A stretch of 64,000 nt of DNA, taken from NCBI GenBank assembly GCA_965202585.1, contig OZ241828.1, positions 53,630,001 to 53,694,000 on the forward strand. The letters run 5' to 3'. Positions within the stretch are counted from its first letter, which is position 1, and each line of letters opens with the position of its first letter. The notes beneath the pieces are model-generated. The model made no database searches and was not told the origin of the DNA. It was given only the letters and a program-made list of their open reading frames with translations. The position numbers were made by a program, and so were the translations under genes. This DNA is from Thalia democratica (Eukaryota). Shown here in pieces: positions 29,029 to 49,277 of the stretch.

Positions 29029-30350
29029 GTAAATAAATGATAACTGAATACTTAAATATAATGATATACATTACTACATTATTTATCTTATAAGCTACTA
29101 AAAATAAAAATAAAGGTACATGACGCATCTTTTTCAAACAAAATAACCTTGTAAATACTGCTACGACATTACAAATTTATTAAGCCGTGTTTGTTTTGCT
29201 TAGCAGTAACACAAAACGAACTTTTTTAATCAATGAGACATAAAAATGTTTTTGTGCTTTTTTCGCTACATGATATAATTCAATTAATTTAAATATTTTT
29301 TAAAGGACGAAAAACAGCAAATTCTCAAATTAAGATAAATTAACAGCGAAAATTATTCAGGGAAACAGCAAAGTAAATAGCTGAACTTTTTATGAGCTAC
29401 ATAATGCCTTTGCGAAAGACTATCAATCTGTGCTGACTTTTAATTAATAGCAAAAGCTTGCGGTTTTGCCTTGCAGATAAATAGAATGTTTTTCAAAAAA
29501 TGATTAAAGCGCGCATTTCTTTATTTTCATATTTTTTCATACAACTACCATGCTTAATTATATTAGCGTAGCACCTAATGTTTAGACCATATGAGTGCAG
29601 AGAAAATAATAGAGGCTTTCAATTTATTACTCTTAAGGCAAACATTTTAACATGCCAACAGTGTATGATGGATTGAGCAATGAAACTTGAAGGAGTTGAT
29701 TATTTACGCAATTATTCAGATTATTTTGTGTTTCTTATCTTTGCATCTCCTGCTGGGGTTTAACAAATGCTTGTAATCTACTTTGGAACTTCAATTTAAA
29801 TGTAATTTCTTCATTAAAAGTTAAAGTTGACATCATATATATTTTTGTAAAATTTCACAAACCATATAAATATTTTTTAAGATCTCACAATTAAATTCAC
29901 AGTTTTTGAATTAGTATTATAGGCTATTTACGAAGCAGAGTAATTTACAGCCCGTAAATGTTTTTAATAAATGAATAATTCATGCAAGCTGCTGATACCC
30001 ACTTAATAATTCACCGCACTCAACAAAACTGGCAAGCACCAGCTTTTAGATTTTTGTTCCAACAAAGTAGTTGTTTGGGTCAGCGTTCTCAACTTGTTTT
30101 CACATTGATTTAAAAGGTCATCAAAATCCCTCTCCTTCGCCATTGAGAGTGTAGCTTACAACAAGTTTTAACGTTACAACATTGTTTTGGGCATGAAACG
30201 TTCTGTTGAACTTTAAAACAAGTATATGCAACGTTAAGTCGAAAAAAAGAGTGTTGCGTAACTTTAATTGGTATTTGTCGTTAATTTTTAAGGTTTAATA
30301 CAAACAAAATTAAAATTTAAAAATAATAATTGTTTTATAACTATAAACAG

Positions 30351-30579
30351 CCCAAACAGCATCAGCCTACAGCCAGCAAAAGTACTACTGTGACCAGTCC
30401 GAAGTTCTGATAGACTGCCAGACGTACAGACCCAACCACCGCTTGTCAATTTCAAGGGCAGAATACGGAGGATCCCAACTCAGTTGTAACAAATTGTCAC
30501 ACAACCAAGGAATTAGTGGACTGAGAGACATGAGCTGTTCGCTGCCGTCTGACAAGGTCCTTCATAAAGTGAAAGCAAT
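30351..30579 (+). CDS. ADGRL: Exon: end of signal peptide and N-half of SUEL/Gal-lectin domain
   Basis: aaacag acceptor, gtgagt donor; QTASAYSQQKYYCDQSEVLIDC..AEYGGSQLSC..MSCSLP; phase 1 to 2. Confidence 0.9.
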
Positions 30580-33500
30580 GTGAGTTTGTGAAGTTATTTT
30601 AAATACTTGAAAAAATGTATTTTTAGACACAATGAACTTTATAACTACTTTTATCGTTTTTAGCGGAAAAGATCCTTTTTAATTTAAGTAAAAATACCTC
30701 GGCAGTAGAAACATGAAAGCGCTTAGTTTGACATGTCAAAAAAAAGTGCGTAAATGCAAAGTAAACTGCCCATTCAATTGCGTTAGTTGAGAAATTACTC
30801 TTGCACAAACGCCCAAAATTTATATCTCTTGTTTCGCTCAAACTTTCGATGGCAGTTTTTTCAGAAAAAACACAAGTCGTTTACATGCCGCTAAAGTAAA
30901 ACCAGCAAACCACTCTCAATTAAGCCGATCTGCGCAGATTGCTTGTATTATCCAAACTTCAACGCTCAAAGTCACATAGCAAAGGGGAGATTGTGTACAC
31001 AGCAGTATGTAGTTTTTGTGTTTCACAGCACACGGATTTTAAAGAAAAGTTTTCTAGAACGGCGCTTTAGTAGATTACAGTTTTATACTCTTTGTTTTCG
31101 ATACTCGCGCTAGTACTCCGTCTCATTTACCCGCTGTTGTGTTTGTTTGTCCACGGCGCAAATCGGTGTTGTGATAGATCGAAAGCAGCGGGGGGATAAA
31201 GATAGAGGGTATTTGCGAGGAACCTAAATATAAATAAATATGTGTATATGTGTTGTGATCGAGAGTGCGTGTCCCAAACAGGTTTATCGTGTTTCGACTG
31301 CAAACAACAGGCAGCGGAGTTCGTGACGATTCAGAGCGGATTTGCATGAGAACATGCCTCTTAGAACCTCGCTCTCTTGTTTAATAATCTCCGTTTTCAG
31401 CAGTCGCTTTTTGCGTTTTTTAGCCTTTTCGCGTAGTATATCAAAATCGCGCTGTTACTGCTGAAAAATATTTCTTAATAATCTCGCTATCAAACTAGCG
31501 ACGACTGATCTGCAGATAAGAGCAGAGGCGAGACATTAATGTTATTAAATTTTCGCATGCCATCAGCGCGCGGCTTGGCTGCGAGCGATTTTACTTATTC
31601 GGCATCCTACTTTTTTTTGAGCAGTAGCTTTTCTGCTGAATTTTTCTCAAAATTTACTAGCACCTCTGTTTAACGACTTATTAACTTTATTGAACACACA
31701 AATTGCCGTTTAAGCGCCGAGGTTATCCGTGTTTAGATGTTATCTGTGTTTACGCGAGAGTTGTAACTTGGTGTTTTGATAACACGGCCACACATGGCTC
31801 GTATTTATTTGTACAACTTGCTGCAGGTGCGACGGCAACGCTTACTGCAAGTTCGAGGTGTCGGGCTCCCTGTTCGAAGACGGAAACGCTTGCTTCAACA
31901 CGGAAGGAAAGTTCCTCAACCTCGTGTACGAGTGCAAGCCCCTGGGTGAGTTGTTTTAAACTTTTTGATATTTATTTTTCACAATGCTACAACAAAGAGC
32001 TAAAGCTTGCGTGTGATAGCCAATTATAAAGCTTTAACCCTTGAGCGGCAATTTGATAAAACAGCCAACTTCTGACGACTGCTTACATTCTGGTGATTAT
32101 GACGTCACATGCGCGGTAGAAGTCCATTTAGGTGTTGGGTTACGCGAGATTACGGCTTGTTATGGCGCATGTGCCAAGTTTATTATATTTTTCACCTCTA
32201 TCTGAGTGTGTGAGCGAGAATTGGTCAAATTAGAAACACGACACCGCGCAAAGGTGCATCAGACGCCCATTTGCCACCGTAGAGCAGGTTGAAGTCGACG
32301 GCAAATTTCGCTGATTACCACGTCATAATGGCTGCGACCGGCGGCAACTTATGCGACGCTTTGATATGGAGACTTTGGTAGAAGTTTAGTCAAGTTTTTC
32401 TTTTTATACAAAAATTCGTTTTGAGTGCGCTTTCAAACGCAGACTTTTCCTTTCAAGGCTGAGCGGGCTGTGGGATTGTGTGCTTTTGCTACAATAACAC
32501 TGAACGAGTATAAAAACATGCGCATAGTTTTGTGCTTCTTAAAAGTTATTTTTGTACAAGCTCTGAGACTCACCTTTTGTAAATTTTCTGTTTAGTTGTA
32601 ATTTGGTTGTAATTTTTGGGGTTAAAAGTAACTTGTTTTTAATGATTCTAGTAAAGTATTTTTAAAAATTTTTCATTAGAAAAAAAATACAAAAAAAGTT
32701 CATTTCTAAAAAAAATAGTATTTAATTAAGCTTATAGATATACAAAAAAAAATATTTTAAGAGTAATAAAATACCGTTTAAAGGTATAAGTTTTATAACA
32801 TTTATAACAAAATTGAGTTGTTTCTTTAAGTTATATAAGTAAACTGAACTTTTTTACTGCAAAAATAGTTTTATACTCCTTACGTTTTTAAAGCATCAAA
32901 GTCATACAACTTTATCATTATTTGTTTATAATAAAGTTTTATCTCTTTAATGTATAAAATGTCAAGCTTGTTTAACCTTAGGTTAATTCAGTGCACATTA
33001 AAAAGATACTTTTTCCTCTCAGAAATATGTTCAATTGAATAATGCTAATTGAGTTATGAGATTCGCCAAATTCACAAATTATTTTCACTGGTCTACTTCA
33101 CAGCTGTCCAGGTCATTTCCTTCTTTGTTACGTCATAATAACATAAATTTGTTTCCTTTCTCATGTTACAATTGCCTTTTTGAGTGGCAGTGTCTTTTTC
33201 AAAAGATAAATTATATTTCAGTATACTTTTAAAGTAAATATCTATTTGTAAATGTTTTTTTCAAATCGCGACTCTCGTATAAGACGTATCTGTTTTTTAC
33301 TACTTTCTTTGATGTCTACTTTTTATGTGGTTAAAATACCTTTTCATTATTTTTTAGGCTTTTCTAGCACAGTTAAAGTTTTTAGGTTGTCTACTTAAGA
33401 TCATGAGTGGCTTACTCATAAATGACGTGTATAACTGTAGCACAGCTTCTAGTTATAAGTTGAATTACTGTGCTTAAAGTTTATACAACAACAATAGTCA

Positions 33501-36500: not shown

Positions 36501-39500
36501 TGCCAATACACTTTAAAAGTTAAGCGAAACAACCGATTTTGCTCGCCTATTTCATTAAAATAGCATTAAATTCGAAAAACTAGCAAGTCCTTAAAGACCC
36601 TGAAACCGCATTTCGTTGCAGTGAGATTTTATCTTTTCGTTTTTGTTTTGCTGAAGCGCAACGTGTTGTTGTGTTATGAAACGGCTTCCCGGCTGCTTTG
36701 CACCCAAACAACTTGCATCCCCACCGCATGTGTTTTGCACTGCTAATCCCGAATAAGTTAATGGCAGGTCACGTCTTTTGCAATAGCGCCTGGACGAGTT
36801 TTAATTAGATTTTTTTGTTGTCTCTCTTTCGCGCAGAGATTATCCACTTAGCACCTTGCTCGCAGTGTGGTGGTGTGTCAAACTGGAAGAAACTTGTGTT
36901 TCGGTGTCTGGATGAACATTGAAAACTCTTGTAACCTGACGTTAATACTTTTATTAAAATAAGGGGAGTTTCTAGCGCTTTGCTAGTTTAAAGTTGAAAC
37001 AAGTGAAACTGTGAAAGTAGAAGTTTTGACACATGCTAGCGTGTAATGCTTTGTTTTATGCTTTCAAAACTGTCGCGACAGTCTTAAAACATATATATGT
37101 ATTTTTCAAGTTAAACTTTTTCAAAGTATAAGCTACTGAAGATCAAGGGTATATTGAACTTTGAAACGTGAATGACATCTTTATTTAAAGTTGTTGGCGG
37201 TTGAAACAACATATGACTCTTTAGCATTGTCTTATTGAATTTCGGAACTTAAAATAAGCTAGAATGATTGACAAGTAGCGTATTTAGTTAAGCATTTTAA
37301 ATAATTCATTAATATTTAATCTAAAAATTGCCTACCTGTGAAGAAAGTAGTCATTTCCGTATGCTTGTTCTATGCTGTTCTGAAAATTGATTATTCGCCA
37401 GTTATGAATTCACTATAAGCGACTAATTGATGTAAGGCTTTATGAAATAATAATTTCAATACCCTTAAGCGGCAAGAATATTGCATTAAATTTGAAAAAA
37501 TGCGACTCTTTTAGTAACTTTGGCCAAATAACCTCTTATAGACTGGCATCATTAATTGACATTAATAACTGCACGCTTATAAAGCTTTTGGTTAAATTTA
37601 GATAAAATTTACCAGCTTTTAATTTAATCAATAGTTCGTCGAAAAGTAAGTTTCAATATTAAAAATTTCACAGCTACATTTACTTTCTGCAATACAACAA
37701 CGGCCTGGAGAACTTGTGGGTTTACGACAACATTCACGATTTGACGACGGGCGAAGTGACGACATTTCAAAACATCCCCACAAGTCCCGGCCCCGACGGA
37801 ACCGGAATGGTCGTCATCGGGAATGATCTCTACTACAACAAGGTTCGTTTGTTGGTTTTTTAAAATGTGTGATTTCAACTAGTGTGCAAAATACCTGCTT
37901 CAAAAAATTGATTTGTTTGAGTTACAATTCGGTACATCACAGTACTAATTTAAAATTTAACTAAAACAACTTCTCGTTGACCAAAATGCGCAGAGCATTC
38001 GGCTTGTTGCATTATAAAATTGAAATAAAAGTTTACGGATGACTTTCTGAGGGGGATCTCATCACAGCGGGTCACGTATTTCGCGTGAAATCAGGGTTGG
38101 GCATCCTTCATGTGGATTATGACACTGCGTTTATTAATCACTGCAACTTTAAGCACTTTTTGAGCTAACTCGTCTTTACCTGGCTAATTTATCGCGCACG
38201 CAAACTATGTGCAAAAAGTAATTATTAGCTCACAGAGCGGCCGTGCACAGTTTGTATCTTTATGAAAACATCTAGTGCTTAATGTGCCAGATAATCAAGC
38301 TTTAATTTGCAGCATGTACTTGAAGATTTTTTCTAATTTTAACAGGGCTAATTTTCGCATAATTCGCCGACGCGACAAGTTTTTAAAAGCTAATTATTTG
38401 GGTAAAATTGTTTATCTACAAAGTTGACAATATGAAATTTATAAACGATTTCACAGTAGTTAGTGTTATTATGATAGCATCTGTATAAACTGGCACACAA
38501 TTTTTGGTAATAAGTTTATTATTATAATTTTTTTAACATATGAATATTTTTATTGCATATAAGCGTTAAATGACTAAATTTTTAATTCAACAGAAACGCA
38601 CGAGAACAATCTCCAGGTTCAGGTTAGGGGGCGACCCTAACAACGGAGTGTCTAGGGATCTTTTCAAGGCGAACTACGGGAACACGAGCCCCTACTACCC
38701 CATGGTCAGCACCGACATCGACTTCAACGTGGACGAGACCGGTCTGTGGGTCATTTACGCCACCGAGGAAAACAACGGGAATATTGTTTTGAGCAAGTGA
38801 GTTAATACCGTGAACTGAAAAAAAATATTGCAGAAAATGTTTGACTGAATTAAAAGGCTTTTTTTTTTAGTTATATAGAGAAAGTAAATAATTGTTAATG
38901 AGTTTGTCGTACAATATAAATGTTTAAAAAACTAAAATTTGATATTTGATAAAAAGTTTATAATTAGTGTGTGAAAAACTACAAAAAAAGCTTGAAAATT
39001 TTGAAAATATAGTTAAGACTGAAAGTATTTAGCCGCGGCTTTTCAAACAAAAAAATTGTCAAAATCAAAGAAAAGTTCACGCTTTATGTAGTAAGAAGCG
39101 TAGGTAACAAATTTCCAATTTCTTTTATTTAGTTTTTTCGCTTGACATTTCACTGCTATATATGACTAATGCAAGAGGATTGTTTTGCCTGAAAAACTTT
39201 TAACGCACACATTTCGGCTAATAAAACTTATAAACTTTCCACTTCAAGGCTTTGTTTGTTGCAACTTTGACAGGTAGAAGAGTCGCTTTCCCACAAGCAA
39301 CTGCAAATTAAATTCGAAAATTCATCGCTTTTGTCTTTTGTCGAATGCACAGAGCGTTCGCAAAGCAGCTCGCTCGACACCAAACTTGAATTAAATTAAT
39401 TGAGCAGCAGCTTTTGTGTATTTAGTTGTGTGTACAAGCGTTTTCAGTTGAGAGCTGCCCCAGCCTTTTTAAAATGTTAAACAGTTTTGATAGCAGTCGT

Positions 39501-42500
39501 AATCTCGTGTTGACAAAACATTTTCGGCTTTTATCTTATCGAGCAACGTGAAAAAGTTGAAGTGCTTTGCTGATAAAGATGTTTGGTATGAAAATGCGAC
39601 TTAATTTTATGAGATACACTGCTACCGTAAACTAACTTGTTTGTGCGAAAACACGACTTCAATTATTACGCAATGTATACTTTTTCTGTTATTTTCCTAC
39701 CTTGTCTTTTGCTTTTTACAAAAAAGCAATTTCAAAAAAATACTTTGTAAAAAAATAATCTGCGAAGAAAAACAAACCGTAAAAACAAACAAAAAATACA
39801 CTGTTTAAAAGCTTTTATCTGTTTCGAGACGTTACAAGTACATATGTCTCTGTTCGGGTGTTAAACAAACACTATTATTTGTTGTTTTTAACATTAAAAC
39901 CCAAGACAAAGTTTAACTTCAGTTTTCTTAGCAGCAAAACTTTTATTGAGTAATAGTAAAAGTTTTCGATACAAACCCGTTAAACTCTGTATGAATTGTT
40001 TTCTACTGCAAAAGTGGATATTTTAAACAACAACATCAAAATAAACAAAGAGCGTTTGTAGAGAAAAGTAAAACAGGGGCATACTAAAAAATTAAATTCA
40101 TGGTTGTTAGGAGCTCCGATCAAAGATAATGTGATATTTTGATTTGTTTGTTTGATTATAAAATATGTAGGATACTGAATTTTATACGCTTAATGTTTGG
40201 CACCAAACTCTGAAGTCGCTTGTATGTTTTCCAAAAGCGAAAATATTTTTCTGAAGAGAGCACCATGCCGCTGAAGCAATTACGTCAATAAACATCGAGG
40301 ATTCAGTTTCAGGACGCTTGCGATAAAGTTTCGCACAAGCTGAAACGGTTTGAATAGTTTCAAGACTTTCTAGAAAAAAAAAATTGGCAGCCTTGTACAC
40401 ACTATGATCAATAATCGAGTTTAATCGAGTTTTAATTGCAATCACTCTTGTAATGTCTTATCAGAAAAACGCTCTAAATTGATTTGGCTACCGCACCACG
40501 TCACAGAACATGCCACTGACGTTTGCTTGGCACATCCGCTGAAAATGATTCTATACCGGGCTTGTCCAATCGAATTATCGCAGCGCTTATCTATCAGCGA
40601 TCCTTTCTATTGATTATTTGTGTGTGTTTGCGCGCGAATCGAACAAAACTGCAAGGATTTTGAGGTTTTAATTTAGCACGGCTCCTTGAGTTTGTTTTCG
40701 TCTGGAAAGTGAAACGAGTTTAAATTTGAAAAACTTCATTCAAACAGACAGCTGTTCACAACTGAGTGCTGCAGACTTTTTGGGCGACACTTAAAAGTGC
40801 TTGAGACTTTGGCTTTTCCCGTTTCTAAACTTTCCCGTTTTTTTCAGGATTGACAGGAACGACCTGAGCATCGAGGAGTCGCACAACACTCCTTACGACA
40901 AGATGGCAGCTCTGAACGCGTTCATGGCCTGCGGGGTCATGTATGTGGTGAATGGGACTTCCCTGAAAATCGACTACATGTACAACACCACCACTTCGCA
41001 AGGAAAAAGGGTGAGTTTTAGATATACATACACATTTTTAGATATTTTTTTGTGTTTAGTGTTTTATTTATTTTCAATAAAATGTTTGTCTCAAGGTGTT
41101 AAGTAAATAAATTATTTACTATCACATGCTACAAACAGGTGAACATCGACGTTCCTGGTGTTTTAAACACGACAACGTCCATCAAGTACAGCTACTACAA
41201 CCACCAGTTGTACGTGTTTGAAAGCAACGGCTACGCCACCCTCTACCAAGTCAACTACAACCACAACGAAGACGACACACCAACCATAACAACCAGCACT
41301 CAAGCGAAACCCGATCCGACCCGAAACCCAATAAAAACATCCACTAAACTTGGTTAGTTATACTAAAAACTTTCAAAGTAAAAACATAATGCGTAATCCA
41401 TGGAATAACCTTATATTTTTGAGCACAAGCGCTAATTTAAACAAAGTTTGCTTTAAAAGTTCAAATTCGAGTAAAAGCCTTCTCAAATGTGTTGTTTCAC
41501 AACAATCGCCAGAGCAAACACGGCAGGTCGACCAATTCGCTCTCCATCATTCTACAAACCGTTTGTTCCTCAAGTGCCCGCGACCCTTCCTCCCTAATTC
41601 ACGGCAAACAAAGCAGGGTATTATGACGTCACAATTAGCCGCTGATTAGCCATCGCACTCGAGTGTATTCTTGTCGCGCCGTTCTTTTTTATGTTTTCCT
41701 AATGCTCGCTCTCTCAGCTGTGTTGCCGACCCGCACACGGGCCAGCCACCCCAGTTTTCGGAAAAATCCTTGAAAACTTGGCAGTTTTGTCGACTTTTCG
41801 CCAAAATGCGTATTGGCGGTACTTGAGAAACGAGCGGTAATTTTTCAAGTTTAAAAGCGCTTTTGTGTGCTTTTTGACATGAAATAAAAAAACGTTGTGC
41901 GAAAAGTTTGACTTTTTATACATGTTAAGCGAAAACTTTAGGTGAACTTAGTCCCATGAGATTGATGCTACGGAAATGTATAGATTTTTATAAAATGTTA
42001 AATAAAGTTTTTGTTTATAGTTTAAGCTTAATCCCCCCTGAACAAAAAAACATACGAGTTTAAACATTTTTAAAATATACTTTGTTCTTTGTTTTTTTGT
42101 GATAAAAAAGGACTTTAAACTAATATTGCAGGATGTGCTTAAAACGCTGTCTTAATTTGAATTTAATACCTGTCTATTTTATTACAGTAAGTTATTAAAG
42201 TTAATTGCCGCGTTTTGGCTAGGCTTGAAATAAAAAAAAATTGAAAATTGTTAAAAATAGTTATATATATAAAACATAAAAACACTCTTTACTTAATAAC
42301 TTACATTACATTTTTTTATTTTTGAAATTGGCTTAACAACTTAATATAATTTATTTACTTATAGATATTGAACATCCTTTGTATTGCAAACCTGTGAGCT
42401 CACAAGGATTTGAATGGGAGAGAGTTGAGACCGGCCAGTCTGCGACGGTTGCTTGTCCAGGTAAAAAATTGAAGAATTGTAAATTTATTAAAAAAAAAAA

Positions 42501-45500
42501 CAACAGTACAGCTTTTATGCACTTGAACTGTAATTGAAATAAAAAAAGTAATGTTTACCAAAAATATAGCTCTAATGTAATAAAACATCATTTTTGTATA
42601 AATCAGTACTTTGTACTAATTACCAAAATCATAACGTTTTGTAGCACAAAGCTAATCAAACGCTTTCGAACCCAAACCGCTTTAAAAAACGATTGTTGTT
42701 AGAAACAAAAACAAAAGGAGCAAACTAGCGAGCCGATAACCGGCATTGAATAATTAATACGGGCGGCGTCAAAATCAAGCAAAAGTGGTGAGTGATTCGT
42801 GCTGTGCACATGTCGCAAATCCGTCATTTGCACTACTTCCACCGAGGGTGGCTGAAAAATAATAGCTCTTCGATGAAACATTTAGCACTCAACGCATCAA
42901 TTAAAGACTGGTGGCACGCGCCATAATCTAGTATTTAAATGCTGTGGCTTTGTTTCATTTTGCGAGTGGCCGTGCCAAAATTTTAGCTGCATAAGTGATG
43001 GCTTGATGTAAAAATGTTTCTGACCTTTTAAAAGCAGCTTTATACTCGTTTTGCACAGAGTAACGGTTTTGCATACTAAAAAACATTAATAGTTTGTTCC
43101 ATAACTCTCTCTTTCTGTAAGCTGTATGTAAATGGATTTGATTAACATTAATTAATTGAATTCAATGTAATTTACAGGGTCTGACAACGGAGTAACAGGT
43201 CACGCCACATGGAAATGCGTGGCAGTTGACACTGAAACAGCCGCGTTCTCACCAGAAGGTGCCAACTTCGAGCATTGCACCAGCGACTGGCTCGTACGAC
43301 TTTCAAGCGAAGTAAGTGAAATTTCACAATGATAACTGAGACAAATAAAGTTGCTTTGAGAAATATCACTGTGTAGCATGTATGCAACAAAGCGCGTATA
43401 ACATGTCACAACGTCTAATTGAATCAAGCTGCGCTCAATTTTCTCAATTCAAACTTTTCTATGTAGAAGTTTTTGAACACGGAGAGGCGTGCAATGTGAT
43501 CATGTCTCGCGTAATTGCATTAATTTCGGCCCGCGAATGCATCTTTAGCTTTTATGGCAAAGTGAATTTCTCAGGGATTTTGTTTGTTTTATGAACAGCG
43601 TTTTTATCTTATTTGTTACTGCTTTGCGTTTTTCTTTGGGTTTTATATTTAGCATATGCAATTCAAGTTTTGTTTTTAGGTGACTCAAGAATCAGTAGTT
43701 GATAAAAGTAGAGATTTAGAAAGGCAACTGCAAACTAAGAAACTGATCTTGAGACCTTGGGACGTAGTAGCTACAATCGACTTGTTAAATGGTAAGTTTC
43801 TGGCTTTTTACTGTTAAGTAAACCTACATTGTTTCTTTTTTTATGTTTAGCTAATCGTTTTTCGTTTTACAAGAAATTAAAAAGAAAAAATGCTGTTGCT
43901 CAAGATTGTGCAACACTTAATTGTGTTTTGTTCAAAGTAAATGTCGCTGAAAATGTCTCAAATTTATTTGTTAAAAAAAAACGTATTATAATAGATAAAA
44001 TTCTAAATGCCGGTGCTTTGACATTTGACTCTAGAGCAATAAAATAATTCTGCGATATGCAACAACAGTTTGACATTTGACCAAAAATAGTGCGATTTAA
44101 ATCGAAAAATATAAATTAAAAGTATAAACTATCAGTGAAGTAACAACGTTCCCAAGAGAGCAGACAGCATTAATGCTGAAGAAAGCTTTTCAGCTGACCA
44201 CTGGCTTTTTAGCTGACCTTCGCGTACGCGCGGTATTCATGACAAAAATCAATAAAAATGTAACAAAATTATCACGGAAACACTGTTTCATGTGCTTCTT
44301 GATGCGCACGCGAGTCGGAAAAAGTTGAGAAGATCGATATTTTGCACGCTCGAGTGGGTTTGCGAGATGCTGCCGGGAGATAAGACGAAGCACAGAATAA
44401 ATTTGCATCTCAGTCTAAAGCATACAATAAATACTGTAAAAACTTAAACAAATTTATATTACTTTAGAATTAAGTTTAAAAAACTGTTATTTTTTTGTAC
44501 AGAAATTCTCGATGCCACCGAAGACAAGAAGCTTCTGACTGCGAACGCGATAGCTGACAACTTCGTCAAGATCGCAGACGTGCTCCTAGACGAGAACTTG
44601 GAAGACAAGTGGGATCAGTTGAATGTGCGCGCAAAGGTGAGGTTTCGTTGTAAATGTTTCAATCACACATTTGTGCGCAGCTACTTTCTTTATGCTGTCG
44701 TGATTGATAATGATCGCGCATGTTACTCATGCCACGGTGACATATTGGCAGGCGGCCATTTCAGTGGCCTCGAAGTGGCACATGTGTCACTGTTAAGTTT
44801 TCAAGTGTTTGCTGTTGTCGATTGTTTTTATTTTAATTTATGTAACTCTTATTAGAGCTTTGAAACTTATTTGAACTTAAAGTTTAAGATTAACATTTTT
44901 ATTTGAAAAAATAATAAACTTTTTAAAATAATTTTCCTTATGTTCTAGAGAGAGCAAGCCAGCCGAATAATCGAAGTCATGGATCGCATCGGCCGCCTCC
45001 TCTTCTCCGACATCAGCCCGGGAGTGAACACCCTGCCCTACAGGTCCACCTTCCTGTCCACCCATGTCAAGCTCGAGATGAAAACTCAAAAGCAGCTCGA
45101 ATTAAACGAGGCGGAGTTCCGTCCCAACGTTCACACCCACGTTAATTTCCAGTCTTCGGACCACAGGGGTCAGCTGACGGGCTTGCTGATGGTGGCCTTT
45201 CACAAGCGATTGGGCAAGTACATGGCAGACGAGCGTTCCATGGGGTCCCAGTCAAAGTTCCCAGTCGATTCGGAGCTGATCAGCGTCTCCAGCATCTCTT
45301 CATCTACGGATGATAAATCAAAGTCAAACGAGAAGGTTACGATTAAATTCGGCGGAGAACTGTTCAGCAAGGTGAACCTTGAGCAATCTTGCGCTTTCTG
45401 GAACGTCACTTCAGTTGAAAACACAAGGTTTGTCTTGGTTATTTAAAAAAAAAAACCAGAAAAAAAATCTTACTGTGATTAAAATTGTGTTTATTTAATA

Positions 45501-48500
45501 AATTCAATAATTCATTTTTTTAACAGAACCCTAAACGGAATATGGTCACCAAAAGGGTGCGCCACGGAGAAGCATCAAGACGGCAGCGTGACGTGTACTT
45601 GCGACCACGCCACCGCCTTCGCTGTTCTCACGTCCAACGACGGGGAGTTCCCGCTGTCGTGGCAACAGAAAATGAGCACCGTAGACCCAACTCCGGGATT
45701 TCCCCCGACCTCGGACGGCCAAACAGAAACAGATGAGGTTGAAGTAGAAGAAGTTCAGTTTGAGGGTTTGTCGATTATCAGAGTGGGTTTGGTGTTTTCA
45801 ATACTGATCCAAATGGTTGTTCTCGTCACCCTACTATTTTACAGGTTTATACAATAGTATTTTTGCAAAAAAAAAATAAAAAGTGTGATAACTTGCTAGT
45901 ATTAAAACCTTTAATCCAATTTTTTCGACCAAAAACACTTAGGTTAATTAACTCTTTGAAAACTAACAGCCACAAACTGGATTCCAACACGATCCACAAA
46001 AACATCGTCGTCTGTTCGCTCGTCACCGGCATTTTGTTCGCGTTTTTCGTCAACCAGACTTCAAACAACCAGTGGTGCTCCATGGTCAGTGTCCTGCTCC
46101 ACATTGGCATTTTGTCTTCGGCCTGCTGGTCCACTCTGTCCTGCTACCACCTCATGTCGGACCAGGGCGAGAACAAGCGGTACAAAACGTACTACTTTGT
46201 CGGCTACGGTGCCCCCGTTTTGTGCGTGGTCATAACAGCAGCCATCGACAAGAGCGTTTATGATGGAAAGAAGATGTAAGTGTTTTGTTTCCTATTCTTA
46301 AAGTATTATAATTTAATGCATAAAAATTAAACGTGACAAATACTTTTAAACTTCTCTTACGGTAAACGTGATACAATAATTGCATTATACTCATTTACAT
46401 TAACTAACATTAACGCTACAGGTGTTGGGTCGACCCTGGTACAAGCTCAATTTACGGAGTTGTTGTACCGTTGCTGGTGGCCGTGGTCATTTCTGTTTGT
46501 TGCGTTGTGGTCGTTTTGAAAAACTTGAAGTCTCCCATGTCTTCTGCGAGGACTGCTCTCACGCACAAGCGTAAATCAATCAGGTTAGAACATTAAGTTT
46601 GTTGTTGCAATTAATAGGTCTTTTGATAAAATGTTTTTTTTTTACAAAATGTGTGTTTAAGGTAGACATATAAAAAACTAACAAATGTGAAAATTACCTG
46701 ATATATTCTGTCATGATAAACGAAAAAACTTTGTCTTTAGAAAAATGACCCAGCAAACCTGCTTCATATACGCATTGATGGCAGCGAAGTGGAGCTCATT
46801 GATACCTTGGATGTCGACCAACAGCAGCCAGATTGTGACCGCCTGGCTCTTCTGCATATTCACCATCATCTACTCGCTCGCCTGCCTGGTCTGCTTCTGC
46901 ATACTCGATGAAAAAGTTTGTTTGAAATTCTAAATTTTTTTAATTGTTCACACAGCTTCATATTGAATTTGATAAAAAAAAAAAAAAGAAAGTTAAACTC
47001 AGTTGCTTATTGTAACAAAATTTAACTTTATTTTTTCTTCAGGTCAGAAGCAAATGCTGCAAATGGCTGCACAACATCAAAAAAGACCAGGACTTTAACC
47101 GCAGGCACCACCACCACCCTGTGGGACCGGACGGAAGGCGGAGACCGTTCGGAGCTACCGACAGTCAGATCAACCCGAACAGCGGCTACCCGCTCCACGC
47201 CGTGAGAACGACAATGCAATCAAACACGTCGAACGGGTATCCGGTAAACGCTAGCAGCGAATCGCCTACCGGTGAGTATTGTTGGAAAAACTTTGATATT
47301 AGTCTCTTTTTGTCTGTTTCGATTGTTTTTTTCTAACTTAAAAAAATTATTAGATTTACTTGAAAACTGACCAAATATTTTTTTTAGATTACCGACAGCC
47401 CTTGTCGTCTACTTCCACCCACGTGGCTCCGAGGACGCACTACGGCGACGAGATCACGCGGCCGCTCATGCAGCTTGCCCCTTCTAGCTGCTCGTCCCTC
47501 CAGCACTGCGACCTCATCGCCAGTTGCCACGGCATCCACGGCTCCACCGCGGCCCCCTGCTGCCACGGCAACTGCCAGCGCGGCCTCGAGGGCAAGTTTC
47601 ACCAGCAGCAGAGGTACTCGACCAACAACGCGAACAGCTGGAACAACTACGTGCAGAGCGGACCGATCGGGCACCGCACCACCATCGCCACCAGCAGCGG
47701 CGGGAAGCAGGTCCAAGTCACCCTGCCCTCGCCGAGCTGCAGCCACTGCCGCGCGAACGACATGCAGGGTGGTTCCCCTCACTACTACGAGCAGCCGCGC
47801 AACCCCACTTCCACGGTCCCCATGTGCTCGTACCAGCCGAAGATCGCCTCCCCGACCAGCACCGTGACCAGCGTCCACCCGTACGACCACCTGCACCAGC
47901 AGGACAGGTTCGCGCCCCAGCCGAGGCAGCAGAGGTGCAGGTGCGGGCCGTTGCATATGCAAAGTGCCAGCCCGCCGCACTCGACCTGTTCCACCATGAC
48001 GTCGTCGAAGCCGGGGCACTTGTACGAGACCCTCGGACCCTTCAGGTCCAATGACGAGACTTCGCCCGTTCAGCATCAGCCCGTGGACGACTCGGTCGGT
48101 CTGGACTTTCACCAGCAAGTCAGACGACAGGTGCTTTAGGTTCTAATTTTGTGTGTTTTTGCGTACATTAGTTTTGTATGATAATTTTGTTTTAAACAAA
48201 TATATTTCATAAAAGCAATAAAATTAAACAAATAAAGTGTTGCTCAATTCTTTTAACGTTTTTTAAATTTTTTTCTTGTTTCTTTTTACACAGGAGTTTT
48301 AAACTCAACCTCGTTGTTTACAGTCGCTGCAATACCAGAGTGCCAATTACCGGCCGGAACGCCAGAACATCGACTGTGACGTCATAACCAGGCACCCCTC
48401 GTCCCGCTTCCACTACTCCCAACACCGCACTCTGCCCGAGGACTCGCGCCACCCCATACTGGAAGAAGACCAGCTGCTGATGCGGGGCGACCCCCACAGG

Positions 48501-49205
48501 CACCACCCCTCTCGCGTCATGACGACCAGCTTCGGCCATGACAACCTCATGTCGCAGCACGCGTCCCGCGACGTTCTGCTGGCCGCCGGCCCATCCTTCC
48601 ACGGGCACCATCTGGGCGGCGGGGTGCGCCACGGAAACAAGTACGGCCAGCATCACCATGGAAACCACGTCCACCACCAGCAGCAGGGATCAGGTCGCAG
48701 CTCGGACCCGCTTTCGACCGACCAGGGCTACGACACCGACTCTTGCCAGCAGCTTCAGTTCGGTCGACACGCGGCGACGTCGTCTTCCAATCAGCAGCGG
48801 CGCAAGGAGAACGTCATTACGACGTCATCGGCCAACTCGTCGCGCACCACCGAAGACGACGAGTCGTCGGAGAACGACCTAGAAGTGGAGAAGATAAACC
48901 GCCACAACGAAGCGCTGCTGTCGCCCGCCGACTCCGAGTCAATGATCGAGACATCGAGGGGCGGCAGGCTGAGCGGCACGGACACAGTGACGTCGTGGGC
49001 CGCCGTGAAGCCGCCCAAGTCCAGCTCGCACCACCACTTTGAGGGAAACCACCACCAGGCGCACCAGAGGCACTCGCAGCACTTCTCACAGGGGGGAAGT
49101 TCCCAGCTTCCGAGCTCCTACACCCTCCCCGAGACGTCCGAGTCGGCCACCAAGGCGAAGATCGACCTGAGGGCGGGCGGAGTGAACATGATCACTAACC
49201 TGTGA
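30351..49205 (+). CDS. ADGRL: Latrophilin-like adhesion GPCR (lectin-OLF-HRM-GAIN/GPS-7TM-PDZ motif), 19 coding exons in this span; signal-peptide exon(s) upstream
   Basis: Manual splicing of 19 GT-AG exons gives an uninterrupted frame (5006 nt = 2 + 1668 codons). Translated motifs: 8-Cys SUEL lectin, GMWMKDP / [18 protein letters not shown] / NAFMACG (olfactomedin), CAFW..W...GC...CTCDH (GPS), seven hydrophobic helices with NTIHKN and CW, C-terminal ITNL. Confidence 0.95.
31827..31945 (+). CDS. ADGRL: Exon: C-half of SUEL lectin domain
   Basis: ctgcag / gtgagt; CDGNAYCKFEVSGSLFEDGNACFNTEGKFLNLVYECKPL; phase 2 to 1. Confidence 0.93.
33782..33797. repeat. Exact copy of the 16-bp near-palindrome ATTGTGACGTCATAAT (CRE core)
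   Basis: Identical to 49205-49220 and to the reverse complement of 41620-41635. Confidence 0.85.
36191..36329 (+). CDS. ADGRL: Exon: start of olfactomedin domain
   Basis: ttcaacag / gtaagc; EPCNEG...NPGMWMKDP; phase 1 to 2. Confidence 0.92.
37674..37842 (+). CDS. ADGRL: Exon: olfactomedin domain
   Basis: tttcacag / gttcgt; YIYFLQY...PDGTGMVVIGNDLYYNK; phase 2 to 0. Confidence 0.92.
38594..38796 (+). CDS. ADGRL: Exon: olfactomedin domain
   Basis: ttcaacag / gtgagt; [38 protein letters not shown]; phase 0 to 2. Confidence 0.95.
40848..41010 (+). CDS. ADGRL: Exon: olfactomedin domain
   Basis: ttttcag / gtgagt; TPYDKMAALNAFMACGVMYVV..IDYMYNT; phase 2 to 0. Confidence 0.95.
41139..41352 (+). 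CDS. ADGRL: Exon: end of olfactomedin domain and Thr-rich linker
   Basis: aaacag / gttagt; SIKYSYYNHQLYVFESNGYATLY..TPTITTST; phase 0 to 1. Confidence 0.93.
41620..41635. repeat. Exact copy (reverse orientation) of ATTGTGACGTCATAAT
   Basis: ATTATGACGTCACAAT read directly. Confidence 0.85.
42365..42460 (+). CDS. ADGRL: Exon: hormone-receptor motif (HRM), first half
   Basis: cttatag / gtaaaa; LYCKPVSSQGFEWERVETGQSATVACP; phase 1 to 1. Confidence 0.9.
43178..43311 (+). CDS. ADGRL: Exon: HRM, second half
   Basis: tttacag / gtaagt; GHATWKC..FSPEGANFEHCTSDWL; phase 1 to 0. Confidence 0.92.
43680..43791 (+). CDS. ADGRL: Exon: GAIN subdomain A
   Basis: tttttag / gtaagt; VTQESVVDKSRDLERQ..PWDVVATIDLLN; phase 0 to 1, required for frame continuity. 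Confidence 0.85.
44503..44636 (+). CDS. ADGRL: Exon: GAIN subdomain A
   Basis: tgtacag / gtgagg; NFVKIADVLLDENLEDKWDQL; phase 1 to 0. Confidence 0.92.
44949..45427 (+). CDS. ADGRL: Exon: GAIN subdomain B to first half of GPS
   Basis: gttctag / gtttgt; RIIEVMDRIG..VDSELISVS..VTIKF..SCAFWNVT; phase 0 to 2. Confidence 0.93.
45527..45844 (+). CDS. ADGRL: Exon: GPS, tethered-agonist (Stachel) segment, acidic linker, TM1
   Basis: ttaacag / gtttat; GIWSPKGC..TCTCDHATAFAVLT..LSIIRVGLVFSILIQMVVLVTLLFY; phase 2 to 2. Confidence 0.95.
45970..46275 (+). CDS. ADGRL: Exon: TM2-TM4
   Basis: ctaacag / gtaagt; NTIHKNIVV..WCSMVSVLLH..YYFVGYGAP..AAID; phase 2 to 2. Confidence 0.95.
46422..46583 (+). CDS. ADGRL: Exon: ECL2, TM5, ICL3
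   Basis: gctacag / gttaga; CWVDPGTSSIYGVVVPLLVAVVISVCCVVVVLK; phase 2 to 2. Confidence 0.93.
46741..46915 (+). CDS. ADGRL: Exon: TM6-TM7
   Basis: tctttag / gtttgt; FIYALMAAKWSSLIPW..VTAWLFCIFT..CFCILDEK; phase 2 to 0. Confidence 0.93.
47043..47271 (+). CDS. ADGRL: Exon: helix 8 and proximal cytoplasmic tail
   Basis: ttcttcag / gtgagt; VRSKCCKWLHN..RRHHHHP; phase 0 to 1. Confidence 0.92.
47388..48130 (+). CDS. ADGRL: Exon: cytoplasmic tail (Cys/His/Gln/Pro-rich)
   Basis: tttttag acceptor, long GC-rich open frame. Donor most likely CAG|gtgctt at 48130; AA|gtcaga at 48118 is an in-phase alternative. Confidence 0.88.
48324..49205 (+). CDS. ADGRL: Terminal coding exon: His-rich tail ending in class I PDZ-binding motif MITNL*
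   Basis: gtttacag acceptor, phase 0, 294 codons to TGA; the x-T-x-L terminus parallels the vertebrate latrophilin VTSL end. Confidence 0.9.
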   Translation, partial: SLQYQSANYRPERQNIDCDVITRHPSSRFHYSQHRTLPEDSRHPILEEDQLLMRGDPHRHHPSRVMTTSFGHDNLMSQHASRDVLLAAGPSFHGHHLGGGVRHGNKYGQHHHGNHVHHQQQGSGRSSDPLSTDQGYDTDSCQQLQFGRHAATSSSNQQRRKENVITTSSANSSRTTEDDESSENDLEVEKINRHNEALLSPADSESMIETSRGGRLSGTDTVTSWAAVKPPKSSSHHHFEGNHHQAHQRHSQHFSQGGSSQLPSSYTLPETSESATKAKIDLRAGGVNMITNL

Positions 49206-49220
49206 TTGTGACGTCATAAT
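49205..49220. repeat. Exact copy of ATTGTGACGTCATAAT overlapping the stop codon
   Basis: TGA(49203-49205) followed directly by TTGTGACGTCATAAT. Confidence 0.85.
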
Positions 49221-49271
49221 GAATTTTAAAAACTTGCACATCGCATTCCAAATTTCTCCTTTTTTGATTTC

Positions 49272-49277
49272 ATTAAA
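49272..49277 (+). terminator. Possible proximal polyadenylation signal (ATTAAA); a canonical AATAAA lies at 50975-50980
   Basis: Hexamer match downstream of the stop in T-rich sequence; weak evidence in an AT-rich genome. Confidence 0.25.

What the first reader, a model, noticed from the sequence alone, without database searches (positions are those of the whole stretch)
45970..46915. 7TM core has lost most conserved activation residues: possible signalling-atypical latrophilin
Against recalled ADGRL1: TM3 WLCLEGVHLY becomes WSTLSCYHLM (E3.50 to S); ICL2 is shortened and lacks the hydrophobic LLLVEVF segment; TM5 N5.50 is S; TM6 LLGLTWAFG becomes LMAAKWSSL (G6.50 to A, a Lys in the helix); TM7 FNAFQG becomes FTIIYS (Q7.49/G7.50 lost). 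H2.50, W6.53, the TM4 GY..P and the TM3-ECL2 disulfide remain, and the frame is intact. Together with the HA|T site, the long linker and the expanded PDZ tail, this suggests a receptor repurposed for adhesion/scaffolding or G-protein-independent signalling. Fast tunicate-type divergence is the main alternative.
Basis: partly seen in the sequence, partly recalled or inferred. Interest (0 to 1): 0.8.

Follow-up and report, generated by a model that had tools for sequence, protein, structure and literature searches.

The report
Divergent but constrained tunicate latrophilin 7TM
This is an expressed, strongly conserved tunicate latrophilin receptor whose membrane core has replaced most residues that other latrophilins use for activation; much of that change is shared with sea-squirt orthologs, so it is a lineage trait and not a one-off oddity.

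Summary

- **Residues lost and kept.** Against 161 non-tunicate relatives, the gene departs at E3.50, G3.51, Y3.55, N5.50, G6.50, T6.52 (now Lys), G6.56, N7.46, Q7.49 and G7.50. It keeps the scaffold positions, including W6.53, and ICL2 is 5 residues shorter.
- **It is a working gene.** Spliced contigs in marine metatranscriptome runs use exactly the predicted GT..AG introns. Against an orthologous contig from a related species, dN/dS over TM2-TM7 is about 0.02 (dS 1.3), and all atypical residues are identical there.
- **The divergence is stepwise.**
  - Ciona, Clavelina and Styela orthologs already lack N5.50, G6.50, N7.46, Q7.49 and Y3.55.
  - E3.50 is also lost in two relatives known from marine metagenome contigs.
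  - G7.50 to Ser and Lys6.52 occur only in this species and its close relative.
- **A second latrophilin exists.** A paralog on contig C2 keeps E3.50, the LGLTWMFG motif, N7.46 and G7.50.

The receptor is atypical at sequence level and stably so, but loss of G-protein signalling is untested, and fast tunicate divergence explains most of the changes. The scan's other notes on this gene concern other features, not this one.

The parts
30347..31956 (+). N-terminal rhamnose/SUEL-lectin exons (about 30347-30580 and 31783-31956)
   Evidence: SUEL_Lectin is weak on the exon piece (E = 0.09). tblastn aligns this region to the lectin part of the Ciona and Clavelina orthologs, and those orthologs carry PF02140.
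37663..41354 (+). Olfactomedin domain in four exons (37663-37860, 38570-38797, 40837-41019, 41133-41354)
   Evidence: Pfam OLF scores 24.1, 57.8, 49.9 and 18.2 bits and covers profile positions 30-245.
42376..43329 (+). HRM-like exons (42376-42462, 43171-43329)
   Evidence: Only 42376-42462 is aligned: tblastn to the Clavelina ortholog. 43171-43329 is assigned from the translated sequence alone. No Pfam HRM hit on the one piece scanned, 43171-43329. This part is inferred.
44502..45427 (+). GAIN-domain exons (44502-44636, 44949-45427)
   Evidence: GAIN is weak (17.1 bits). The exon junctions are confirmed by spliced contigs in RNA runs.
45527..45844 (+). GPS (CTCDHA|TAFAVL), tethered agonist, 59-residue stalk and linker, and TM1
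   Evidence: Pfam GPS scores 37.3 bits. The linker length is compared. The junctions 45427/45527 and 45844/45970 are present in RNA-run contigs.
45970..46275 (+). TM2-TM3-ICL2-TM4 exon. H2.50 is kept, E3.50 is Ser (46139-46141), and ICL2 is shortened (46148-46195).
   Evidence: Pfam 7tm_2 scores 44.5 bits. The best solved relative is ADGRL3 at 53.9 bits. dN/dS is 0.012 against L036.
46422..46583 (+). End of ECL2 (Cys-Trp), TM5 and ICL3 exon. N5.50 is Ser (46492-46494).
   Evidence: 7tm_2 is marginal (14.3 bits). Alignment; splice junctions.
46741..46915 (+). TM6-TM7 exon. G6.50 is Ala, Lys sits at 6.52, W6.53 is kept, N7.46 is Thr, Q7.49 is Tyr and G7.50 is Ser.
   Evidence: No Pfam hit and 10.4 bits to ADGRL3. 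The exon is aligned through the tunicate intermediates. dN/dS is 0.024. Junctions are in RNA-run contigs.
47043..49205 (+). About 650-residue cytoplasmic tail in three exons (47043-47271, 47388-48130, 48324-49205), ending in the PDZ-type ligand ...MITNL and the stop codon
   Evidence: The spliced CDS has no internal stop. The tail is 80-89% identical in L036. The same C-terminal motif is present in Clavelina, L037 and L041.

Best explanation
The window encodes the ortholog of the gene annotated 'ADGRL3' or 'ADGRL3-like' in Ciona, Clavelina and Styela. I call this the A-type tunicate latrophilin. It is a transcribed receptor under strong purifying selection.

**What is shown**
- The 7TM core was remodelled in steps.
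  - On the stem of the tunicate A-type clade, Y3.55, N5.50, G6.50, T6.52, N7.46 and Q7.49 were replaced.
  - Three related sequences also lack E3.50: the marine metagenome contigs L036, L037 and L044. In the two of these that span TM3 to TM6 (L036, L037), G6.56 is also replaced and ICL2 is shorter.
  - In this species and its close relative, G7.50 became Ser and position 6.52 became Lys.
- A paralog in the same genome keeps more of the canonical microswitch residues.

**What is inferred**
- The receptor still uses the aGPCR fold and the link between tethered agonist and W6.53. The Stachel core T-x-F-x-x-L, the TM3-ECL2 disulfide, LHxxxL..W, GxGxP, P5.42, W6.53 and F7.42 are all kept.
- The layer beneath W6.53 and the G-protein-facing ICL2 have been rebuilt with small and polar residues (S3.50, C3.51, H3.53, S5.50, K6.52, T7.46, Y7.49, S7.50).
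- Its activation energetics or effector preference therefore probably differ from vertebrate ADGRL1-3. The conserved long tail with its PDZ ligand probably supplies a scaffold output.
For: **Orthology**
- The best full-length relatives are Ciona savignyi, Clavelina lepadiformis, Ciona intestinalis and Styela clava latrophilins with lectin, OLF, GPS and 7tm_2 domains.
- Where the C-terminus is available (Clavelina) it ends ...MITNL as here.
- The tree places the gene inside that clade with 100/99 support.

**Expression and splicing**
- Marine metatranscriptome contigs and contigs from a run of 'organism A' carry GT..AG joints at all eight predicted junctions.

**Constraint**
- Against the orthologous contig L036, the exons are 84-86% identical without gaps, while the introns are about 50% identical.
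- dN/dS over TM2-TM7 is 0.021 with dS = 1.27, and every atypical residue is identical.
- L036 has only this one match in the own genome, so it is an ortholog and not a paralog.
- Of the 38 coding differences between laid contigs and the window that the tool listed (160 more were not shown), 32 are synonymous. All 9 that fall within the TM2-TM7 exons are synonymous.

**History and paralog**
- The position table gives the stepwise history.
Against: - No functional data exist.
- Q7.49A, G7.50A and G6.50 mutations strongly reduce basal and peptide-induced activity in ADGRD1 and ADGRF1 (PMC9046087). G6.50 and G7.50 are regarded as common features of tethered-agonist activation (PMC13197933). A complete loss of classical G-protein activation therefore remains possible.
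- The TM6-7 exon is too diverged to align significantly on its own.
- dS is near saturation, so the exact dN/dS value is imprecise, although pN/pS = 0.04.
- The spliced protein could not be folded with the tools, because no reference exists for a spliced sequence.
Confidence: 0.6

Rival explanations
1. This is the reader's view: the gene is a G-protein-independent adhesion or scaffold receptor. After duplication, the canonical coupling role stayed with paralog B. The A-type copy lost productive G-protein activation and now acts through its extracellular lectin/OLF adhesion domains and its long PDZ-ligand tail.
For: - E3.50, N5.50, G6.50, Q7.49 and G7.50 are lost, and ICL2 is 5 residues shorter.
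- Mutating these positions impairs other aGPCRs (PMC9046087).
- Paralog B keeps E3.50, G6.50, T6.52, G6.56, N7.46 and G7.50.
- The tail is conserved and keeps T-x-L at its end.
- Latrophilins are known to have outputs that do not need the 7TM or that work through scaffolds (PMC3776922, PMC11540312, PMC10830413).
- A related ortholog, L037, has Lys at the GPS +1 position, so it has no cleavage nucleophile.
Against: - The 7TM is the most conserved segment measured. It is 94% identical at protein level with no indels and dN/dS 0.02, and this includes ICL2 and ICL3. The tail is 80-89% identical. A helix bundle that only anchors the protein should tolerate more change.
- The Stachel core and W6.53 are kept.
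- E3.50 and G6.50 are only 73-78% conserved among human aGPCRs, and several G-protein-coupled aGPCRs lack the TM6 kink motif (PMC8584163, PMC9046087).
- Paralog B is itself diverged: 214 bits against a non-tunicate median of 371, N5.50 is Thr, Q7.49 is Leu, and its Stachel reads SSFAIQV.
Confidence: 0.28
2. The gene is a decaying or relaxed copy, a pseudogene in the making, left over after duplication.
For: The HMM score is very low: 144 bits against a minimum of 216 among 161 non-tunicate relatives. The TM6-7 exon has no Pfam hit.
Against: - The frame is intact and all splice sites are canonical.
- Spliced transcript contigs are found in marine metatranscriptome runs.
- dN/dS is 0.02 against a species whose introns no longer align.
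- All 9 listed contig differences within the TM2-TM7 exons are synonymous.
Confidence: 0.02
3. The apparent losses are an alignment or gene-model artefact, caused by wrong exon borders or a misaligned TM6/TM7.
For: On its own, the TM6-7 exon aligns to ADGRL3 only at E = 6.
Against: - RNA-run contigs fix the exon borders.
- The intron phases before TM2 and TM6 and after TM7 are the same in paralog B.
- The ascidian and L037 intermediates bridge the alignment with W6.53 and F7.42 in register.
- Two independent alignments, HMMER and MAFFT, agree.
Confidence: 0.03

Closest known systems
Tunicate latrophilins annotated 'ADGRL3' (Ciona intestinalis) or 'ADGRL3-like' (Clavelina lepadiformis XP_076812163, Styela clava), plus Ciona savignyi H2Y6J5
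   Same: - Same architecture: lectin, OLF, GAIN/GPS and 7TM.
- The Clavelina sequence has the same long tail with the ...SSDPLSTDQGYDTDS... block and the MITNL end.
- Extended Stachel-TM1 linker.
- Shared loss of Y3.55, N5.50, G6.50, T6.52, N7.46 and Q7.49.
   Different: - Only 32% identical over GPS-7TM.
- The ascidians keep E3.50, G6.56 and, except Ciona intestinalis, G7.50.
- Here these positions are Ser, Leu and Ser, position 6.52 is Lys, ICL2 is shorter, and the GPS reads HA|T where ascidians have HL|T or HM|T.
Vertebrate ADGRL1-3 (solved ADGRL3, for example 7SF7 and 7WY5)
   Same: - ADGRL3 is the best solved relative of the TM2-4 exon.
- Same domain order.
- The T-x-F-x-x-L Stachel core, W6.53, the disulfide and the C-terminal T-x-L PDZ ligand are all present.
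   Different: - About 27% identity over GPS-7TM to the best non-tunicate latrophilins.
- Lacks E3.50, N5.50, G6.50, N7.46, Q7.49 and G7.50.
- ICL2 is 5 residues shorter.
- Stachel position 7 is Thr, not Met.
- The Stachel-to-TM1 segment is about 29 residues longer.
- No Pfam Latrophilin (PF02354) tail.
Paralog B in the same genome (G000:C2, about 50313200-50334000, minus strand; near-identical copy on C1502)
   Same: Lectin, OLF, HRM-like, GPS (HL|S) and 7TM. The intron phases around TM2, TM6 and TM7 match. It is sister to the A-type clade in the tree (97/94).
   Different: - 23% identical to the window gene.
- Keeps E3.50, LGLTWMFG, N7.46 and G7.50.
- Its best non-tunicate match is a vertebrate ADGRL3 at 37%.
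- Its Stachel is SSFAIQV.
- It has a normal-length linker.
C. elegans LAT-1 and mouse LPHN3 dual-mode signalling
   Same: These are latrophilins with documented outputs that do not depend on G-protein activation. They include N-terminus-only functions and recruitment of scaffolds through the tail (PMC3776922, PMC11540312, PMC10830413).
   Different: Those receptors retain the canonical microswitch residues and also signal through G proteins. For the window gene, no mode has been tested.

Membership tests
Latrophilin (ADGRL) subfamily of adhesion GPCRs | N-terminal rhamnose/SUEL-type lectin domain | tested here: inconclusive
   The exon piece scores only 13.6 bits (E = 0.09). It aligns to the lectin region of orthologs that carry PF02140.
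Latrophilin (ADGRL) subfamily of adhesion GPCRs | Olfactomedin domain (chordate-type latrophilins) | tested here: met
   Four exons cover OLF profile positions 30-245, scoring up to 57.8 bits.
Latrophilin (ADGRL) subfamily of adhesion GPCRs | GAIN domain with GPS motif directly before TM1 | tested here: met
   GPS scores 37.3 bits. GAIN is weak at 17.1 bits. The motif is CTCDHA|TAF, with His at -2 and Thr at +1.
Latrophilin (ADGRL) subfamily of adhesion GPCRs | Family-B 7TM (Pfam 7tm_2) closest to ADGRL, and placement in the ADGRL clade | tested here: met
   The TM2-4 exon scores 44.5 bits to 7tm_2. The best solved-structure match is ADGRL3. The tree places the gene inside the tunicate latrophilin clade, next to vertebrate ADGRL (the chordate node has 89/99 support).
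Latrophilin (ADGRL) subfamily of adhesion GPCRs | Latrophilin cytoplasmic C-terminal region (PF02354) | tested here: not met
   No Pfam hit on any tail exon. Only the terminal T-x-L PDZ-type ligand is shared, as seen directly in the sequence.
Canonical tethered-agonist-activated, G-protein-coupled aGPCR | Stachel consensus TxFxxLM and HL|T/S cleavage site | tested here: inconclusive
   The Stachel is TAFAVLT: T1, F3 and L6 are kept and M7 is Thr. The cleavage site is HA|T. Cleavage itself cannot be tested here.
Canonical tethered-agonist-activated, G-protein-coupled aGPCR | Toggle Trp W6.53 and aGPCR signatures LHxxxLxxFxW (TM3) and GxGxP (TM4) | tested here: met
   W6.53, LH...L...W (with Phe replaced by Ala) and GYGAP are present. 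Signatures are from PMC8584163.
Canonical tethered-agonist-activated, G-protein-coupled aGPCR | TM7 signature FxxxxxxQG7.50 and TM6 G6.50 | tested here: not met
   TM7 reads F-CIFTII-YS and position 6.50 is Ala. Among the 161 relatives, Q7.49 is present in 156, G7.50 in 155 and G6.50 in 149.
Canonical tethered-agonist-activated, G-protein-coupled aGPCR | Central polar core (H2.50/E3.50) and N5.50 | tested here: not met
   H2.50 is kept, E3.50 is Ser and N5.50 is Ser.
Canonical tethered-agonist-activated, G-protein-coupled aGPCR | Measurable G-protein activation | not testable with these tools
   This needs cell-based BRET or reporter assays.

The most novel reading that the evidence does not exclude
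A whole clade of tunicate latrophilins, most extremely this one, may have evolved a different activation core: S3.50, K6.52, T7.46, Y7.49 and S7.50 in place of E3.50, T6.52, N7.46, Q7.49 and G7.50. This core has been kept for a long time under strong selection. The receptor would then either couple by a mechanism that does not need the TM6/TM7 glycine kinks, or signal only through its tail, with G-protein coupling left to paralog B. Either way it would be a natural experiment on which aGPCR microswitches are dispensable.
Probability: 0.3. Interest if true: 0.6.

Novelty: new variant of a known kind. Interest (0 to 1): 0.42.

Why it matters
Structural work on adhesion GPCRs names W6.53, Q7.49/G7.50 and the G6.50 kink as the core of tethered-agonist activation. 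Here a latrophilin ortholog lacks four of the five canonical 'x.50' reference residues that were checked (TM2, 3, 5, 6 and 7). It has nevertheless been held almost unchanged at protein level while synonymous sites and introns saturated.

It also sits beside graded intermediates (Ciona, Clavelina, Styela and a planktonic relative) and a paralog that keeps more of the canonical residues. This gives a ready-made series for testing which residues are needed for G-protein coupling and which for folding, adhesion or scaffolding.

It also cautions against reading Ciona 'ADGRL3' as functionally equivalent to vertebrate ADGRL3.

The practical weight is moderate. Tunicates are known fast evolvers, and no function has been measured.

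Tried and rejected
- **Single-exon searches of TM6-7.** Pfam and solved-structure searches gave nothing significant. They were replaced by a multi-species alignment.
- **Origin of the A/B duplication.** The ML tree joins paralog B to the A-type clade (97/94). AU tests do not reject B + vertebrates (p = 0.078) or A + vertebrates (p = 0.091). Both branches are long, so a tunicate-specific duplication is favoured but not settled.
- **B-type orthologs in other tunicates.** None could be retrieved. The search for homologous proteins only accepts candidates near the query length, and spliced sequences have no reference. Kamesh 2008 (PMC2396169) reports three LEC homologs in Ciona at about 25% TM identity, which fits an old paralogy.
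- **Structure prediction of the spliced 7TM.** Left out, because there is no reference for a spliced protein and long sequences may not be typed.
- **Branch-site dN/dS.** Not feasible. dS is already 1.3 to the nearest relative, and only protein sequences were available for three of the four named ascidian orthologs.
- **Pseudogene and artefact readings.** Rejected.
- **A third latrophilin combining OLF with a 7TM.** Sought and not found. Other OLF hits lie megabases away from any 7tm_2 hit.
Full report
**What is at the coordinates.** The window is AT-rich eukaryotic DNA (31% G+C) with short introns and GC-richer exons. It lies on contig C4 of an 802-Mb assembly.

A gene runs on the + strand from about 30.3 kb to 49.2 kb. 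Its parts, in order:
- lectin exons
- four olfactomedin exons (Pfam OLF up to 57.8 bits)
- HRM-like exons
- GAIN exons
- a GPS exon (37.3 bits)
- the 7TM exons
- a long tail

The finding's range, 45970-46915, holds three exons with AG/GT borders:
- 45970-46275: TM2, TM3, ICL2 and TM4
- 46422-46583: TM5
- 46741-46915: TM6 and TM7

**Is the alignment right, and is the pattern unusual?** The TM2-4 exon matches solved ADGRL3 chains best (53.9 bits). HMMER places a 5-residue deficit at the cytoplasmic end of TM3 and ICL2. The TM6-7 exon alone is too diverged for Pfam and reaches only E = 6 against ADGRL3.

I therefore aligned it together with tunicate intermediates and 14 other sequences, and then with 161 non-tunicate relatives. 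The consensus residue is present in the 161 as follows:

| Position | Consensus present in | Window gene |
|---|---|---|
| E3.50 | 156 | Ser |
| G3.51 | 141 | Cys |
| Y3.55 | 136 | Met |
| N5.50 | 147 | Ser |
| G6.50 | 149 | Ala |
| T6.52 | 150 | Lys |
| G6.56 | 150 | Leu |
| N7.46 | 154 | Thr |
| Q7.49 | 156 | Tyr |
| G7.50 | 155 | Ser |

The gene keeps H2.50, C3.29, H of the LH motif, W3.46, GYGxP, the ECL2 Cys-Trp, P5.42, W6.53 and F7.42.

A profile built from the 161 relatives scores the window's 7TM at 144 bits. The median is 371 and the minimum 216. The comparison set was gathered by similarity to this gene and to its Clavelina ortholog, and it contains some redundancy. The counts are therefore indicative, not a census.

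**It is a real, expressed gene.**
- Two marine metatranscriptome runs from one sample hold part of the stretch, as does a run of 'organism A'.
- When laid on 44400-49300, their contigs skip eight intervals with GT..AG ends, exactly at the predicted exon borders: 44636/44949, 45427/45527, 45844/45970, 46275/46422, 46583/46741, 46915/47043, 47271/47388 and 48130/48324.
- The CDS joined at these points runs 1,097 codons to ...MITNL and the stop, with no internal stop.
- The tool listed 38 coding differences between laid contigs and the window (160 more were not shown). Of these, 32 are synonymous. All 9 that fall within the TM2-TM7 exons are synonymous.

**It is under strong purifying selection.**
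- A 41-residue fragment at 95% identity led to a 4.3-kb metagenome contig, L036.
- L036 aligns to window 45965-49965 at 75% overall. It has no other match in this genome, so it is the ortholog from another species.
- The exons are 84-86% identical without gaps, the introns are about 50% identical, and every splice site is kept.
- Nei-Gojobori over TM2-TM7 (214 codons) gives dN = 0.026, dS = 1.27 and dN/dS = 0.021. The TM6-7 exon alone gives 0.024.
- All atypical residues are identical in L036.
- The 7TM is the most conserved segment measured, at 94% protein identity. The tail exons are 80-89% identical and carry indels.

**Where the changes arose.** The nearest full-length proteins are latrophilins of four ascidians: Ciona savignyi, Clavelina lepadiformis (XP_076812163, 'ADGRL3-like'), Ciona intestinalis and Styela clava. 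All have lectin, OLF, GPS and 7tm_2 domains. The Clavelina protein ends ...MITNL as here. So do the metagenome or read-assembly contigs L041 and, as ...MVTNL, L037 (a Tara Oceans scaffold with tiny introns).

The position table and the alignment give a stepwise history:
- **All A-type tunicate sequences** have lost Y3.55, N5.50, G6.50, T6.52, N7.46 and Q7.49.
- **The window, L036, L037 and the fragment P0004** have also lost E3.50. The window, L036 and L037 have further lost G6.56 and shortened ICL2.
- **Only the window and L036** have Ser7.50 and Lys6.52.
- **Ciona intestinalis** independently has Ala7.50.
- **L037** has Asn at 2.50, Ser at 7.42 and Lys at the GPS +1 position.

In the ML tree the A-type clade has 100/99 support. 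From the chordate latrophilin node, the path to the window gene is about 3.4 substitutions per site. The paths to Ciona and Clavelina are about 1.7-2.2, and the path to frog ADGRL3 is 0.2. Fast tunicate divergence therefore explains most of the list. The remainder is a further burst on the stem shared with L037, followed by stasis.

**A second latrophilin.** Genome-wide scans with 7tm_2 and OLF place both domains together at only one other locus, C2 at about 50.313-50.334 Mb on the minus strand. A near-identical copy sits on the small contig C1502.

Assembled from exons with canonical splice sites, this paralog B has:
- GPS CKCNHL|SSF
- TM3 WLALESFQIF
- TM6 LGLTWMFG
- TM7 LILNVFLG

It therefore keeps E3.50, G6.50, T6.52, W6.53, G6.56, N7.46 and G7.50. 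It is 23% identical to the window gene, and its best match is a vertebrate ADGRL3 at 37%.

It is not fully canonical:
- N5.50 is Thr and Q7.49 is Leu.
- Stachel position 6 is Gln.
- Its profile score is 214 bits.

RNA-type runs hold about the exonic share of its words.

The tree makes B sister to the A-type clade (97/94). AU tests do not reject the alternatives (p = 0.08-0.09), and both branches are long. Kamesh 2008 reported three LEC homologs in Ciona with about 25% TM identity (PMC2396169), which fits an old paralogy.

**What it probably does.** Published work gives the following background:
- The aGPCR signatures are LHxxxLxxFxW, GxGxP and FxxxxxxQG7.50, and G7.50 is over 95% conserved (PMC8584163).
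- W6.53 senses the tethered agonist and hydrogen-bonds Q7.49.
- G7.50 bends TM7.
- Q7.49A, G7.50A and G6.50 mutants of ADGRD1 and ADGRF1 lose most activity (PMC9046087; review PMC13197933).
- E3.50 and G6.50 are only 73-78% conserved among human aGPCRs, and ADGRG3 couples to Go with a straight TM6.

The window gene keeps the upper, agonist-sensing layer and the fold-defining residues. It has rebuilt the layer below W6.53 and the G-protein-facing ICL2, largely with small and polar residues. Selection on the helices and loops is intense.

My best reading (0.6) is a functional 7TM receptor with a rewired core and a probably altered coupling profile, plus a conserved scaffold-binding tail. It has precedent in the 7TM-independent and scaffold outputs of latrophilins (PMC3776922, PMC11540312, PMC10830413). 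Pseudogene and artefact readings are excluded.

**Novelty.** The lectin + OLF + HRM latrophilin in tunicates is already described (PMC6422961). In the papers I searched and read, I found no mention of the systematic loss of the microswitch residues in this clade, or of its extreme, constrained form here. I file it as a new variant of a known kind, of moderate interest.

Noticed in passing
L037:914-1210 (Tara Oceans metagenome scaffold, ortholog of the window gene): The GPS reads CECNHM|KSF, with Lys at +1 instead of the Thr/Ser/Cys nucleophile. This relative's latrophilin is predicted not to self-cleave. It also has Asn at H2.50 and Ser at F7.42, and its introns are only about 50-180 bp.
   Followed up: partly
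G000:C2:50313200-50334000 (minus strand; L031-L034) and G000:C1502:1-10000 (L035): A second lectin + OLF + GPS + 7TM latrophilin (paralog B) has the unusual Stachel SSFAIQV and an extra intron inside GYG of TM4. The copy on the 17.8-kb contig C1502 differs by only a few residues, so it is probably a haplotig.
   Followed up: partly
G000:C6:43413790-43416966 (L026): Another adhesion-GPCR 7TM, with WMLMEGTLLY and GYGTTTGCWL motifs, resembles the ADGRL/ADGRE type. No OLF exon is nearby. It may be the third 'LEC-like' gene reported for Ciona.
   Followed up: no
G000:C9:28033000-28363000, C9:32143000-32243000 and C9:8832000-8929000: There are dense clusters of 7tm_2 exon hits on both strands. These look like tandem arrays of family-B or adhesion receptors, recalling the 24 unclassified adhesion GPCRs of Ciona.
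   Followed up: no
window 45631 and 45736: Two of the six nonsynonymous contig differences lie just after the Stachel core and in the Stachel-TM1 linker: Thr to Lys in ...LTSND... and Glu to Ala in the acidic run. This fits a weakly constrained spacer. The stretch from the GPS +1 residue into the start of TM1 (the IIRVG / ITWVG block) is 59 residues here, against about 30 in frog ADGRL3 and about 29-43 in ascidian orthologs.
   Followed up: partly
window 48130/48324: All three runs that show spliced contigs (two marine metatranscriptome runs and one run of 'organism A') use a single last-intron junction, 48130 to 48324. That junction keeps the frame through to the MITNL end. No alternative acceptor appeared in the contigs, but contigs drop rare isoforms.
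   Followed up: partly
window 47043-49205: The cytoplasmic tail of about 650 residues is rich in His, Gln, Ser and Pro. It contains blocks conserved from this species to Clavelina and Ciona (SSDPLSTDQGYDTDS, SENDLEVE, YTLP..(S/T)..TKA(K/R)IDL). It has no Pfam match.
   Followed up: no
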